Origin: Salpingoeca rosetta
Lineage: Eukaryota; Protista; Choanoflagellata
Direction of reading: 5' to 3'
NCBI GenBank assembly: GCA_033442325.1
Contig: JAWQFM010000029.1
Location: forward strand, 917,496 to 941,329
Length of the DNA: 23,834 bases
Under the pieces are notes generated by a model, which made no database searches, was not told the origin of the DNA, and saw nothing but the letters and a program-made list of their open reading frames with translations. Position 1 is the first letter of the stretch; the number at the start of each line of letters is the position of its first letter. Shown here one piece after another: positions 503 through 9,916 of the stretch. Both the position numbers and the translations under genes were made by a program.

Positions 503-1825
503 GGCCGATGGAGGTGTTTGTGTCGTTGGCGAGAGCGAGCCAGGTGCAGGTGACGGTGGTGGCGGCGGTGGTGCCGATGCGTTTCAGCTCTTCGTTCGAT
601 TGAGACAGCTGCCGTACACCCGGTGCAATGCAGAAGGAATGGTTGCGGTGGTGTTGGTAGTGTTGGTGGTGGTGTGAAAAGGGTGAGAGGCGCTCTTCAT
701 GGAAGGACATTATGTTATCCAACACACCTTCCTCAACGCACACACAAACACACACACACACAAACACACACACACACACACACACACACACACACACACA
801 CACACACACACACACACACACGCACACACACACACACACACACACACACACACACACACACACACACACACCATCTTCCTATGAGGTCTGCGGCAGCGGT
901 GCGCTTGCGGTCAGACATGAGCGTGGTCAGGACACAGAAGAGCTGCAGAATGTGGATGAAGTGCAGGGTGCTCAGGCAGTCCAGGGTGCCCTTCAACATG
1001 AGCGCAATCGGGTGCAGCAACTTCGGGTGGTCTGTGGCCAGCGACAGTAGCAGCACAGGCATGGCTGCGTCCACCTCCTGTGCCTGCCCCGTGCCAATGT
1101 GCGCCACCAGCGCCCCAACCACCTCCGGCCGTGCACGCGAGGTGGCGGCACGCGGCCCCCTGCCGCCAGTTCAGGATGTCGGCCATGTGCACAATCGACT
1201 TGAAGCACATCAAGAACGCGCGCGTGTGTCTGGCAAACATGGCTGCAGCCATGACGGCGGTGAGCCGGCCCGTGCTTGCAAGCTTGATCACGGTGGTCTC
1301 TGCGCTGCGGCGGTGGGCGTTCTGGTGCTTGTTGAAGCAGCAGCAGCACAAGCAGGTCGAGGGCGGTGATTGGCTGGGCCGTGGTCGTCTTGATTGCCGC
1401 AGCCACGCCTATGCAATGCGCGCATCAAATGCCAGCCCGTTCTTGATTGTAGCCACCACAGACAAACACATCGTGATCATCGCCCCGTTGTTGGTGTTGC
1501 ATGTTCGCTGTCAGCGCATTCACATCATCCATTCCATCCGCTGAACATCAACGTACATGTGTGTGTGTGTGTGTGCGAAGGCATGTGAGGGAGCGGCTGT
1601 GAGAGAACAAGCCACAGCCACACGTGCAGGCAGGCACATGTGAGATCACCGTCATACACCGTTGCACACTCTGGCATCATCTCCCACTCCTCGCCGCCCT
1701 CAACAGTACCGCCACCACCTTGCTGCATGAGAAAGTTGATGACGATTGGGAGGCATTCTGGGCTGTACGATCCAAGCTGGCGCAACACGTGGTCGCAGAT
1801 CTCGCGCAGGCGTGCCGGCGCCACA
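503..1825 (-). pseudogene. FANCD2: FANCD2 internal fragment, disrupted but retaining introns
   Basis: Exon-like pieces about 1825-1719, 1540-872 and 620-503 give RLREICDHVLRQLGSYSPECLPIVINFLMQQ, VVATIKNGLAFDARIA*AWL, ALDLLVLLLL, EVVGALVAHIGTGQAQEVDAAMPVLLLSLATDHPKLLHPIALMLKGTLDCL and VRQLSQSNEELKRIG. These match in order the recalled human FANCD2 segments [65 protein letters not shown] and IRKQLS..YKLIG. There is an in-frame TAG at 1409-1411 and several frame switches within the 1540-872 exon. Confidence 0.85.
738..871 (+). repeat. (CA)n microsatellite in an intron of the FANCD2 fragment
   Basis: Near-perfect CA run, representative of many such tracts in the window. Confidence 0.95.
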
Positions 1826-1921
1826 CTGCACAGCAAGGGTGTGGATGAGGGTGGTCGTGGTGTGTGTGTTGGGGGGGGGGAGGGTAGATGGGCCATCACC
1901 ATCACCGACGTGCGTGTACAA

Positions 1922-6959: not shown

Positions 6960-9916
6960 ATCGCGTGTGCACCCGTGCAACCAAAGGGACGAGTCGTCCA
7001 GGACACGTCGGCCTCGCACGGCGATGCGGTGGAGCCCATGACGGTGACGTCGCCAGAGACGGATCGGTTGAAGAGGCGAGCCGTAAAGTCCTCGTTGAGG
7101 GAAGCGACGGTGGCGATGATGGACCCCTGGCGCAGGTTGATGCGCAGAATGAATCTGCGATGCGTCCTGCGTCGTGGTTGATGGACTGCACCAGCGCGGG
7201 CTCAAACGCCCCGCGGCGCGACTGCCTGCCGGCAAGGACGTTGAACTTGGCGTCAAAGACGAGCGAGACAGAGTACGCGGGCACGCACGCACGGTGGGAG
7301 CCCCTCAAACTGCGTCGCTGGTGTTGGCGCAGAGGCGGTCCGTCGTGGCCGTGGCCGCCGACACCTCATACTCCGTGTCCTCGCGCGAGCGCACGCGCTG
7401 GCACTCGCGGTCGTTGACCAGCGACGCCGAAACGAGCTCGTACATTGTTGAACAGGCACTGCGTCCACGGCGAGCAGATGCCTGTGGTTCTCTGTCGTGG
7501 GCGTGAGCGGGCACGAGATGAACGTGCTGTTGTTGGGGCACGTGCGGCCCATCTGGCACTCGCGGTCTGTGCTGGTGGTGGGCGCGGCCGTCTCAAACAA
7601 GCCAGGCTCGCAGGGCGACACACGCGCGTGGAGAAGTCCGTGTTGCTGTCGCGGTAGAACAGGCCCTCGATGCAGCGGTGGCACTGGCGGTCGGTGAAGA
7701 TGGTGGGGCGCATAGCAGGGCGCACCATCTCCTCGTAGCCGAGGTCGCACTCCGCCACAGTAGTGCAATCGCGCTGGGCCAGAGAGCGCGGCAAAGTCAA
7801 GGCCAACCTGGCACGGCGTGCACGGCGTGTGCTGGCGTTGCGGTCCAGGTCGGCGGTGCCGGCTGGGCACAGGAACTGCTCACAGGAGCCGGGGTAGCCT
7901 GCAGGCACATAGTGGCCATAGGGGCACGGCTGGCAGGCGCTGAGCGGGTTGCGGTCGTGGTCGGTGGTGCCGATGGGGCACGGCTCGCACTTGGCGTCGG
8001 AGGTGGGGGTGAATGCGCGCATGCGCTGTTTGCCAGGGTCGCACTTGGTGATGAGGTGGCACAGGCGGTGCGCTCGCACTCCGTCGACGGGTTGCACTGG
8101 GTCAGGTCGCGGCAGATGCGGTCCGTGGTCGGCGTGGCAGGGAACAGCTCAAACTGGTCCTGGTCGCACACGTCGAGCGTCGTGCACTCTGTGTCGTTGG
8201 TGGCGGTGCATGGCGCGCTGGTACTGCTCGTCAGAGCACGTGCTGCACTGCTGGCAAGACACGTCGTTCTCCGAGTCGCAGGCGTGCAGGATGTATGTAT
8301 TTGGCGGGCACGCGGAGCAGCCGGCGCACTGCACGTGCTCCAGCGCGGAGCAGGCGCGAATCTCGAAACGACCACTGGGACACTCGGAGCACTCCGTGCA
8401 CTCGCGGTCAGAGTCGAGCGTGGGCGCCTGACTCTGGAAGGTGCCAAACTCGCACTTGCTCACGGCCATGCGTGGAAATGTACTCTGAGACCGTGCAACG
8501 CGACACGGCACGCACGTGTCCTGGACGCACTTACGGCAGAGGCGGTCGCGCTGGCGCGTGGGTTCACAAAGCGAATCTCTTCCTCATCCGGACCGCACTG
8601 CGTGACAGGGCGGCACGACTCGGCCTGGCCGTCGACGGGCTTGAAGGTGGCGCCAAGCTCGCACTGGCTGCACACGCGGTCGCTCGTTGGGGTGGGCTCG
8701 GCCGTCTCCTCTTCGCCGGCGTCGTACGTGGTGGTGACGGGGAGACAGGGCACGCCCTGGCCAGAGACAGCCTTGTACTTGCGCTCCGGGCACTCGTCGC
8801 AGATGCGGTCGCTGATGAGGAGGGTCATGGCCTGCATCTCCTCAAACCCCGAGCGCGCACTCTGTGACGTCCTTGCACGTGGTCTGGCGGGGTCGCTATC
8901 GTGATGGTGATGAGTGCCTGCGCAGCAGGTGAAACTGGAGCAGGAGTCGTGGGAGCCTGCCTCCGTGTAGTGAGTGGTTGGGCACAATTGGCCGGCAACC
9001 CGTGGAGCCGTCACTGTCCGAATCGATGGTGCCGGCCGAGCAGTCGCGGCACACGCGGTCCGAGGAGCGGGTTGGCGCGGAGACCTCCTCCTGGCCGCAC
9101 TCGCACTCCTCAATGGGCTCGCATTTGCTGCCGCCAATGGATGGGGAGAACTCCGTCACGCCGTCGCACGGCCGACAGTCGGCCGAGTCGGCGTCGTAGA
9201 CGAGGATAAAGCCAGCGCTGCACTCGCACGTGTCTGTGCAGCCTGGGCAGGAGCGGCGTGCCTCGTAGGCGTCCATCTGGCAAATGGTGTCGCAGATGCC
9301 ATCCTCGCCCTGGCCGGAGCAGCACACGTCAAGCACCACGTCGAGCTGCTCGTCCGTGGGGTCAGCGCACACCATCTCCTCAAACAACTGCGTGACGAGC
9401 TTGTTGCATGTAAGCGTGTCGCAGGAGCACAGGCGGTCCGTGGTGAGCGTGGGCAGGATGGTCTCGATGAAGGGCTCCTCGCACACGCTGGTGGGGAAGC
9501 ACGAGGCGCGGTCCGGCAGCGGCTGGTACTCCATGCCAAAGGGTGCAGCTCACGCACGCACGATCATGCACGGCGTTGCCAGAGACTGACTCCTTCTGAC
9601 CCGGCTTGCACTCGGTCCAGGGAGAGCAGACGACGTCGAAGGACGCGGAGCATGAGGTAGAGGCCCAAGTGCACATGCCGCACGTGGTGCATGGCACGCA
9701 GCGGTGGTCCTTGGCGTAGAAGTAATCGAGAGGGCAATGGGCAATGCACGACTGGTGAGATTGCTGTCGCAGAGGAGGCAGTCGGTGGCGCCCGGTGGGG
9801 TAGCACTTGGCACACGCGTGGAATGGCATTCGGCACACCCGTTGGCCGAGCTCATGCCCGCCATCGGGGCACTCGCTGATGCAGCGGTCGTGATTGGAGG
9901 GGAGGCTTGGGTCCAA
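6960..9916 (-). pseudogene. Large Cys-rich extracellular protein (furin-like and TNFR-like repeats, then a SEA-like module), multiply frameshifted
   Basis: Recurrent C..C..G.E....PT.TSDR.C units (SDRVC, TDRLC, SDRIC, SDREC, TDRQC, TDRIC) and D.D.NP..ACQPC units continue across at least eight ORFs in all three minus frames with no intervening introns. The run ends with YSVSLVFDAKF..FILRINLRQGSIIATV. The 5' end runs into the gap. Confidence 0.75.

What the first reader, a model, noticed from the sequence alone, without database searches (positions are those of the whole stretch)
503..9916. 10-kb mosaic of four unrelated broken gene fragments: possible gene-capturing element or duplication sink
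Seen: pieces of FANCD2, ubiquitin E1, a WD40-like gene and a Cys-rich receptor lie side by side. FANCD2 and E1 face apart only about 100 bp from each other and both lack 5' ends, leaving no room for promoters or upstream exons. Both keep their introns, so they were copied as DNA rather than retroposed. Established: such chimeras typify Helitrons, Pack-MULE/Pack-CACTA elements and subtelomeric duplication zones. Inference: this may be the cargo of a gene-capturing element or a recombination sink. No termini or transposase were found in the window.
Basis: partly seen in the sequence, partly recalled or inferred. Interest (0 to 1): 0.8.

Follow-up and report, generated by a model that had tools for sequence, protein, structure and literature searches.

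The report
Subtelomeric patchwork of dead gene fragments
The 10-kb mosaic is real, but it is one of about 25 diverged copies of a block of dead gene pieces that was copied between the chromosome ends of the choanoflagellate Salpingoeca rosetta, which is an ordinary subtelomeric duplication patchwork and not the cargo of a gene-capturing transposon.

Summary
Window 286-1840 (-) is an internal piece of FANCD2. Window ~2040-3540 (+) is an internal piece of a ubiquitin E1. Window 3540-5500 (+) is a decayed WD40-like piece. Window 6990-9916 (-) is the ectodomain of a TNFR-repeat receptor. The pieces were copied as DNA, with their introns.

The window is the last 23.8 kb of contig C29. The block recurs at 80-93% identity at 26 or more places. 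Apart from one intact interstitial gene, every copy lies within about 75 kb of a contig end or at an assembly join, and every copy has the same polarity towards that end (17/17 and 25/25).

Intact sources exist for three pieces, and those near an end share the fragment's polarity:
- FANCD2 on C21, 35 kb from an end.
- E1 on C26, 27 kb from an end.
- A TNFR-TM-SH2 receptor on C23, with a near-intact copy on C30.

All decayed copies share disabling deletions (41 bp in FANCD2, 22 bp in the receptor). Trees show one parental branch and a star of copies. The mosaic therefore formed once, died, and then spread in a burst. No transposase, helicase or terminal inverted repeats were found.

Shared subtelomeric repeats in this species were noted in 2013, without their content. 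This scan flagged the same mosaic at other ends. It is a known kind of feature and of low interest.

The parts
1..285 (-). Proximal module of unknown origin, shared with the other copies. The block continues left of the window start.
   Evidence: Window 1-1892 matches C24, C2, C36, C4 and C11 copies from base 1-2. Those loci stay alike for more than 100 bp beyond the window start. No Pfam domain. The sequence upstream on C29 is withheld and reads N.
286..1840 (-). Internal FANCD2 fragment (pseudogene) with introns, including a (CA)n intron tract at 730-880.
   Evidence: 77-84% DNA identity to C21:34437-36154 inside the only full-length FANCD2 locus. Pfam FancD2 471-548. The window copy has a 41-bp deletion at about 1143, further frameshifts and one in-frame stop. 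The 41-bp deletion is shared by 8 of 8 copies.
1841..2039 (.). Junction zone. The module boundary at 1892 recurs in other copies. 1898-2031 is filler that has no match in the parental E1 exon.
   Evidence: Matches break at 1892/1898 in the C33, C3, C30, C24, C2, C31 and C1 copies.
2040..3540 (+). Internal ubiquitin-E1 fragment. Exons are 2264-2385, 2514-2764, 2936-3077, 3247-3347 and 3478-3527. It starts at a (GT)n tract that the parent also has in that intron, and ends 13 bp into the next intron.
   Evidence: 83-89% identity to C26:1038146-1039714. The C26 gene has both ThiF repeats upstream and the rest of the SCCH domain downstream. Pfam UBA_E1_SCCH.
3541..5510 (+). WD40-like module: (GT)n at 3537-3560, open stretches at 3851-4570, 4574-4857 and 4861-5274. 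Decayed, and no close parent is found in the genome.
   Evidence: About 14 subtelomeric copies. The only match outside them is 30% amino-acid identity to C2:410843. Window versus C33 gives dN/dS 0.77 and 0.98 with frameshifting indels. Only sub-threshold propeller hits.
5527..6989 (-). Spacer without any domain, contiguous with the Cys-rich module in most copies. It may be the diverged 3' part of the source receptor gene.
   Evidence: Matches 5527-9891 are contiguous in the C30, C2, C23-right, C13 and C11 copies. No Pfam domain. The TM-SH2 part of the C23 protein does not match it.
6990..9916 (-). Pseudogene fragment of a TNFR-repeat receptor, ectodomain only. It runs into the N gap.
   Evidence: 85% identity to C23:868790-871815 inside a 1572-aa exon (TNFR_c6 repeats, TM, two SH2). 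It aligns to amino acids 56-1064 only. About 30 frameshifting indels, many shared with the C33 copy. A 22-bp deletion is shared by 20 of 20 decayed copies with coverage.
9917..10016 (.). 100-N assembly gap that cuts the block. In 21 of the 23 other loci examined the Cys-rich module continues into a shared distal block, which is missing here.

Best explanation
Window 1-9916 is one copy of a subtelomeric duplicon, a patchwork of non-functional internal gene fragments near a chromosome end of Salpingoeca rosetta.

Inferred history:
1. Breaks near chromosome ends were repaired by copying DNA from other chromosome ends, by break-induced replication or end-to-end translocation. Breakpoints fell inside genes that happened to lie in the last tens of kb: FANCD2 on C21, an E1 on C26, a TNFR-TM-SH2 receptor, and a WD40-type gene whose source is no longer identifiable.
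2. At least one junction used an intronic (GT)n microsatellite.
3. This built the mosaic once. It picked up disabling deletions.
4. The whole block was then copied in a burst to some 25 chromosome ends, always keeping its orientation towards the telomere.
5. Since then the copies have drifted by about 4-8% each. They have been reshuffled by deletion (a short form that joins 1143 to 8394), by insertion and by exchange between ends.

The block has no demonstrated function. Shown here: copy number, location, polarity, parents, shared lesions and star-shaped trees. Inferred: the repair mechanism and the order of events.
For: Location:
- The window is the end of contig C29, which is 941,329 bases long.
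- Window 1-9916 matches 27 or more places at 79-92% identity.
- Module 8720-9900 has 26 placements. With the contig lengths (the small contig C51 was not measured), all lie within about 75 kb of a contig end, except the intact C23 gene and a C3 copy that sits 8 kb from an N-gap join at C3:1856905.

Polarity:
- A family-specific 35-mer occurs 17 times. All 9 forward copies are at left ends and all 8 reverse copies are at right ends (the C3 copy at a join is counted as a right end).
- The same rule holds for all subtelomeric placements of the Cys module.

Recurrent junctions and adjacency:
- Boundaries recur at 1143|8394, 1892, 3540, about 5527 and 7228|7431.
- FANCD2 and E1 lie next to each other, facing apart, on 10 contigs.

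Parents:
- FANCD2 is on C21.
- A full-length E1 is on C26.
- The receptor is on C23, with a near-intact copy on C30.
- The FANCD2, E1 and C30 sources all lie within 70 kb of an end and point the same way relative to that end as their fragments.

Single origin:
- A 41-bp deletion is present in 8 of 8 FANCD2 copies.
- A 22-bp deletion is present in 20 of 20 receptor copies and absent from the C23 and C30 genes.

Burst of spread:
- In the FANCD2 tree the parent sits on a 0.11 branch and the copies form a star with tips of 0.03-0.05.
- The Cys-module tree is also a star. Sister pairs join left and right ends of different contigs.

Neutral decay:
- dN/dS is 0.66-0.98.

Reality of the sequence:
- Every bin of 503-6500 is covered in two independent DNA studies.

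Prior record:
- Fairclough et al. 2013 (PMC4054682) report that most telomeric supercontigs share repeated subtelomeric regions.
Against: - No TTAGGG repeats are assembled at this end. The contig ends in a GT microsatellite. Contig ends that do carry assembled TTAGGG are not among the ends found to carry the block, which agrees with the 2013 paper's remark about such ends. 'Subtelomeric' therefore rests on contig ends and on the paper's fosmid mate-pair data.
- The 14 kb after the gap is not subtelomeric family sequence.
- All four pieces are internal fragments. Simple one-step terminal copying is not enough, so extra breaks or deletions must be assumed.
- The WD40-like piece has no identifiable parent.
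- The 41-bp FANCD2 deletion and the short-form breakpoint fall within a few bases of each other. I have not explained this.
Confidence: 0.9

Rival explanations
1. The block is the cargo of a gene-capturing transposon (Helitron, Pack-MULE or Pack-CACTA) that picked up pieces of four genes and then transposed to many sites.
For: Several unrelated internal gene fragments with introns sit side by side, head to head, without promoters. The unit is multi-copy. Non-autonomous elements need not encode a transposase.
Against: - No transposase, Rep or helicase domain in any open stretch of the window.
- The only inverted repeats are CA/GT microsatellites.
- Copies are confined to contig ends and never inverted relative to the end: 17 of 17 and all subtelomeric placements of the Cys module.
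- Copy boundaries differ from copy to copy instead of ending at fixed termini.
- The shared sequence continues for at least 8 kb distally and also proximally.
- The three identifiable sources all lie near chromosome ends and share the fragments' polarity.
Confidence: 0.04
2. Some fragments have been taken into expressed chimeric genes, for example FANCD2-like or E1-WD40 fusion transcripts, with some function, so the block is not only dead DNA.
For: The 2013 annotation contains multi-exon gene models made of these FANCD2 pieces. PTSG_13134 and a neighbouring model carry the curators' notes 'Fanconi anemia protein ... Trash?'. The E1 exons of this copy have no frameshift and keep the catalytic-cysteine motif. 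Runs guessed to be RNA cover most bins.
Against: - The only spliced contig, across 2386-2513, carries the parental bases at 2350, 2554 and 2695. It therefore comes from the C26 gene.
- The same runs also cover introns and spacer, so they may contain DNA.
- dN/dS is close to 1, and frameshifts differ between copies.
- Each fragment lacks the domains its family needs.
Confidence: 0.05
3. The mosaic is an assembly artefact, either a chimeric join of reads from different loci or frames broken by sequencing errors.
For: - The assembly was built from 454 and Sanger reads, according to PMC4054682.
- Independent runs show single-base insertions at 4559 and 5365.
- The window holds four N gaps.
- The 14 kb after the first gap looks misplaced, with pieces 97-100% identical to C29:512-580 kb.
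Against: - The same adjacencies recur in diverged form (80-93% identity) on 10 or more contigs.
- The disabling deletions are 22-49 bp long and shared between copies.
- Two independent DNA studies cover every bin.
Confidence: 0.01

Closest known systems
Human subtelomeric duplicons (Ambrosini et al. 2007, PMC2323237; also Linardopoulou et al. 2005, cited from my own knowledge)
   Same: Patchwork of blocks shared by many chromosome ends, with orientation towards the telomere kept. Block boundaries recur. Copies contain gene fragments and pseudogenes whose intact relatives lie elsewhere. Spread is attributed to translocation or repair between chromosome ends.
   Different: Blocks here are smaller (1.5-4 kb modules against 3-50 kb or more). 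Copies are more diverged (80-93%) and their trees look like one burst. The organism is a unicellular relative of animals, and the telomere-adjacent part is not assembled.
Shared subtelomeric repeated regions of S. rosetta (Fairclough et al. 2013, PMC4054682, methods and Table S3)
   Same: This is the same phenomenon in the same genome. [quoted passage not shown]
   Different: The paper gives no content, module map, parents, polarity, shared lesions or history. Those are worked out here.
Yeast Y' elements and their amplification in telomerase-negative type I survivors (from my own knowledge)
   Same: A subtelomeric unit copied to many chromosome ends by recombination-dependent replication. This would produce a star-like burst.
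   Different: Y' encodes a helicase and is nearly identical between copies. This block encodes nothing intact, and there is no evidence of a telomere crisis.
Pack-MULE and Helitron gene-fragment chimeras
   Same: Side-by-side internal fragments of unrelated genes, copied as DNA with their introns.
   Different: No termini, target-site duplications or transposase. Copies are restricted to chromosome ends with fixed polarity.
Plasmodium falciparum subtelomeric segmental duplication (PMC2279139)
   Same: A conserved multi-kb duplication holding pseudogenes and gene fragments, shared among the subtelomeres of a protist.
   Different: That one is highly conserved between copies and varies in copy number between strains. 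Here the copies are old and diverged.

Membership tests
Subtelomeric segmental duplication (duplicon) family | Multiple copies on different chromosomes | tested here: met
   27 or more places for window 1-9916. 17 hits of a family-specific 35-mer. 26 placements of module 8720-9900 on 19 contigs.
Subtelomeric segmental duplication (duplicon) family | Copies lie next to chromosome ends | tested here: met
   The window is the end of a contig. Apart from the intact C23 gene, copies lie 7-75 kb from a contig end (contig lengths) or, for C3, 8 kb from an N-gap join.
Subtelomeric segmental duplication (duplicon) family | Physical linkage to telomere repeats | tested here: inconclusive
   No TTAGGG at this contig end, and the ends found to carry the block are not among the contig ends with assembled TTAGGG. 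PMC4054682 links such ends to TTAGGG by fosmid mate pairs, 5-40 kb away.
Subtelomeric segmental duplication (duplicon) family | Orientation relative to the chromosome end is conserved | tested here: met
   All 9 forward copies at left ends and all 8 reverse copies at right ends. The same holds for every subtelomeric placement.
Subtelomeric segmental duplication (duplicon) family | Patchwork of modules with recurrent boundaries and exchange between ends | tested here: met
   Boundaries at 1143|8394, 1892, 3540, about 5527 and 7228|7431 recur. Short and long forms are not separate groups in the tree.
Helitron | Rep/helicase protein (autonomous copies) | tested here: not met
   No such Pfam domain in open stretches of the window on either strand. 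Non-autonomous copies could lack it.
Helitron | 5'-TC ... hairpin-CTRR-3' termini, inserted between A and T | not tested
   The unit has no fixed outer limits among copies, so there is no defined end to inspect.
Pack-MULE / Pack-CACTA | Terminal inverted repeats around the cargo | tested here: not met
   The 25 longest inverted pairs reported in 1-9916 (of 349) all pair the (CA)n tract at 725-878 with the (GT)n tract at 2014-2154.
Pack-MULE / Pack-CACTA | Dispersed insertion sites in either orientation | tested here: not met
   Copies are confined to contig ends with fixed polarity.
Processed (retroposed) pseudogenes | Introns absent, poly(A) tail present | tested here: not met
   Homology to the parents runs through introns.

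The most novel reading that the evidence does not exclude
The star-shaped trees, with one parental branch and then about 25 copies of nearly equal age, and with sister copies on different chromosomes and arms, would record a single episode in which S. rosetta chromosome ends were rebuilt by recombination-dependent copying. That would resemble the telomerase-independent survivor or ALT state. The microsatellite-bounded junction would point to abundant intronic (GT)n tracts as the invasion sites that pulled pieces of end-proximal genes into the block.
Probability: 0.12. Interest if true: 0.55.

Novelty: new member of a known kind. Interest (0 to 1): 0.3.

Why it matters
The main value is for annotation. 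The FANCD2-, E1-, WD40- and TNFR-like hits at S. rosetta chromosome ends are relics and should not be counted as genes. The single intact FANCD2 (C21), the full-length E1 on C26 and the TNFR-TM-SH2 receptor on C23 are the real loci.

The result also explains a set of near-identical 'gene-capture mosaic' flags raised elsewhere in this scan. It gives a first module map of choanoflagellate subtelomeres.

In addition, it marks the last 14 kb of this contig as probably misplaced. The 35-mer signature and the shared deletions are handy markers for checking future telomere-to-telomere assemblies.

Tried and rejected
- Upstream flank of the window (C29:907496-917495): it is withheld and reads N. The proximal limit of the block on this chromosome could therefore not be seen.
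I worked from about 45 loci of 3-10 kb instead.
- Terminal inverted repeats: only microsatellite pairs were found.
- Transposase or helicase search in open stretches across the window, including 10-23.8 kb: nothing found.
- Reads:
  - Logan contigs over this repeat are about 100-bp unitigs. None of the records listed spans a module junction, and most laid records were not listed. Junctions therefore rest on their recurrence in other copies.
  - The one spliced contig, which I first took as a sign of expression, carries parental bases and comes from the C26 gene.
  - Expression of the fragments remains untested.
- The idea that sequencing errors explain the broken frames is rejected. Two single-base differences exist (4559, 5365), but the main lesions are 22-49-bp deletions shared between copies.
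- The idea that the C23 receptor gene is an outgroup on a long branch is not borne out. Together with the C30 copy it forms a supported pair inside the star, so the root was inferred from the shared deletions and not from the tree.
- The big protein searches, structure prediction and complex prediction were not used, because nothing here depended on them.
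Full report
WHAT IS THERE

The window is G000:C29:917496-941329, the last 23.8 kb of a 941,329-base contig in a 55.4-Mb, 68-contig eukaryotic assembly. The contig ends in a GT microsatellite, not in telomere repeats.

Earlier notes of this scan name the organism as Salpingoeca rosetta. This fits three facts:
- The telomere repeat is TTAGGG.
- Gene models printed in the supplement of Fairclough et al. 2013 (PMC4054682) read almost letter for letter like translations of this window.

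- FancD2, profile 471-548 of 1418, on the minus strand at 736-1170.
- The E1 SCCH domain, profile 1-109 of 254, on the plus strand at 2423-3187.
- TNFR_c6 and Ephrin_rec_like cysteine repeats on the minus strand at 7369-9155.
- Only sub-threshold beta-propeller hits for 3851-5274.

IT IS A MULTI-COPY BLOCK AT CHROMOSOME ENDS

The FancD2 profile hits one locus along its whole length, C21:34874-40734. It also hits about 15 loci that hold only profile positions 471-550.

The E1 SCCH profile hits two full genes (C20:685-687 kb and C26:1038-1040 kb) plus about 14 partial loci. On ten contigs the two fragments lie 1.4-3 kb apart and face away from each other.

Window 1-9916 matches 27 or more places at 79-92% identity. 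Module 8720-9900 has 26 placements.

With the contig lengths, every placement lies 7-75 kb from a contig end, with two exceptions:
- The intact receptor gene on C23.
- A copy on C3 that turns out to sit 8 kb from an N-gap join at C3:1856905. C3 is larger than any supercontig of the 2013 assembly, so this is most likely a later scaffold join of two ends.

Polarity is absolute. A 35-mer that carries a family-specific 3-bp insertion occurs 17 times. All nine forward copies are at left ends and all eight reverse copies are at right ends, counting the C3 copy at the join as a right end. The same rule holds for every subtelomeric placement.

PARENTS AND JUNCTIONS

FANCD2:
- Window 286-1840 aligns at 77-84% to C21:34437-36154, through introns.
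- In some other copies the homology runs about 250 bp further upstream.

E1:
- Window 2081-3540 aligns at 83-89% to C26:1038146-1039714.
- The C26 gene has both ThiF repeats upstream and the rest of the SCCH domain downstream, so it is full length.
- Its exon-intron layout matches the fragment. The other E1, on C20, has these exons fused.
- The 5' limit of E1 homology is a (GT)n tract that the parent also has in that intron. The 3' limit is 13 bp into the next intron and is followed in the window by another (GT)n tract.

Cys-rich piece:
- It aligns at 85% to C23:868790-871815, inside a 1572-aa exon that encodes many TNFR_c6 repeats, a membrane span and two SH2 domains.
- Only amino acids 56-1064, the ectodomain, are represented.
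- A near-intact copy lies at C30:69 kb.

WD40-like piece:
- It has no close parent. The only match outside the subtelomeric copies is 30% amino-acid identity to a large gene at C2:410843.

The FANCD2, E1 and C30 sources lie 35, 27 and 69 kb from contig ends. Each points the same way relative to its end as the fragment does in the window.

THE FRAGMENTS ARE DEAD, AND THEY DIED BEFORE THEY SPREAD

- All eight FANCD2 copies examined share a 41-bp frameshifting deletion and a 3-bp insertion, and most share three further frameshifts.
- The window's receptor fragment has about 30 frameshifting indels relative to the C23 frame, and at least 15 of them are shared with the C33 copy.
- A 22-bp deletion is present in all 20 decayed copies that cover the site. 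It is absent from the C23 and C30 genes.
- dN/dS is 0.66 among FANCD2 copies. For the WD40-like stretches, window against C33, it is 0.77 and 0.98, and frameshifting indels are present.
- The E1 exons of this particular copy are free of frameshifts. The C33, C25 and C20 copies carry 10- and 11-bp deletions and stop codons. Even so, the fragment lacks both adenylation domains and the C-terminal half of the protein.

TREES

For the FANCD2 segment, the parent sits on a branch of 0.11. The copies form an almost unresolved star with tips of 0.03-0.05.

For the Cys module, 24 sequences again form a star with a few supported pairs. The pairs join left and right ends of different contigs. The short-form copies (1143 joined to 8394) do not group together, which shows exchange between ends after the spread.

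WHAT THE READS SAY

Two independent DNA studies cover all 30 bins of 503-6500 at 97% identity or more.

Contigs over this repeat are only about 100 bp long, and none of the listed records spans a module junction. Most laid records were not listed. The junctions therefore rest on their recurrence, in diverged form, on many contigs.

Single-base insertions at 4559 (+A) and 5365 (+T) appear in several runs. The first would extend the WD40-like open stretch. These are small assembly errors or variants, and they do not rescue the genes.

A spliced contig across 2386-2513, in a run guessed to be RNA, carries the parental bases at 2350, 2554 and 2695. It therefore comes from the C26 gene and is not evidence that this copy is transcribed.

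WHAT IT IS NOT

- No open stretch in the window has a transposase, Rep or helicase domain.
- The only long inverted repeats are the (CA)n and (GT)n tracts at 725-878 and 2014-2154.
- Copy limits differ from copy to copy.
- The shared sequence goes on both ways. Other copies remain alike left of window position 1. In 21 of the 23 other loci the Cys module continues distally into a shared block that also occurs at the left end of C29.

MECHANISM (INFERRED)

Four features fit repeated repair of broken chromosome ends by copying from other ends, by break-induced replication or translocation, with breakpoints inside end-proximal genes and at least one at an intronic microsatellite:
- Fixed polarity.
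- Sources near ends with matching polarity.
- Retention of introns.
- Head-to-head joins without promoters.

The mosaic formed once, decayed, and was then copied to many ends in a short period. Later deletions, insertions and exchanges produced the present variety.

One detail is unexplained. The 41-bp FANCD2 deletion and the short-form breakpoint fall within a few bases of each other, at a GC-rich near-palindrome around 1128-1158.

COMPARISON AND NOVELTY

This is the pattern described for human subtelomeric duplicons (PMC2323237) and for other subtelomeres (PMC2279139).

For S. rosetta itself, Fairclough et al. 2013 already stated that most telomeric supercontigs share repeated regions and used this to call telomeres. 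Their kinase table dismissed 'Fanconi anemia protein' gene models as probable trash. No paper in the library describes the content of these repeats.

First-stage readers of this scan flagged the same mosaic at other ends.

The module map, the parents, the shared lesions and the burst-like history are new detail. The kind of feature is well known.

VERDICT

- Confidence in the subtelomeric duplicon reading is 0.9.
- Interest is 0.3.

Noticed in passing
window 10017-23834: The 14 kb after the 100-N gap is not subtelomeric family sequence. Pieces of it are 97-100% identical to internal parts of the same contig (C29:511928-512553, 518942-520083, 557332-557724, 571430-572121). The stretch is broken by three more N gaps. 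It looks like small duplicate contigs appended to the scaffold end. The original supercontig probably ended at about window 9916 (927 kb, the size of supercontig 27 in Table S3 of PMC4054682).
   Followed up: partly
window 17771-19261 (+): A 496-aa open frame without any Pfam domain. Its DNA matches 30 or more dispersed copies at 71-79% identity, mostly on contig C4. This is a large dispersed gene family or repeat, unrelated to the mosaic.
   Followed up: partly
L020 = G000:C23:867001-877000, minus strand: An intact multi-exon receptor gene. Upstream exons carry TNFR_c6 and Ephrin_rec_like repeats. A 1572-aa exon follows, with TNFR_c6 repeats, a membrane span and two SH2 domains in the cytoplasmic tail. 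This receptor-with-SH2 architecture is unusual.
   Followed up: partly
window 1128-1158; L006 about 1741: The 41-bp deletion shared by all long-form FANCD2 copies and the 1143|8394 breakpoint of the short form fall within a few bases of each other, at a GC-rich near-palindrome. This may be a recurrent break site.
   Followed up: partly
G000:C3:1856905; G000:C17:1385099-1385360: This assembly differs from the 2013 supercontigs. C3 (2.80 Mb) holds a subtelomeric block 8 kb from an N-gap join. On C17 the TTAGGG tract sits 10 kb inside the right end. Later scaffolding seems to have joined or extended telomeric ends.
   Followed up: partly
window 4559 and 5365: Independent sequencing runs show an extra A after 4559 and an extra T after 5365. 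These are likely homopolymer errors in the 454/Sanger assembly, or variants from sister copies.
   Followed up: no
L021 2331-8904 and L018 4354-10000: The distal subtelomeric block beyond the Cys-rich module (at least 6.5 kb, 80-86% identical between C3 and the left end of C29) is a further shared module. It has no long clean open frame, and its content was not analysed.
   Followed up: no
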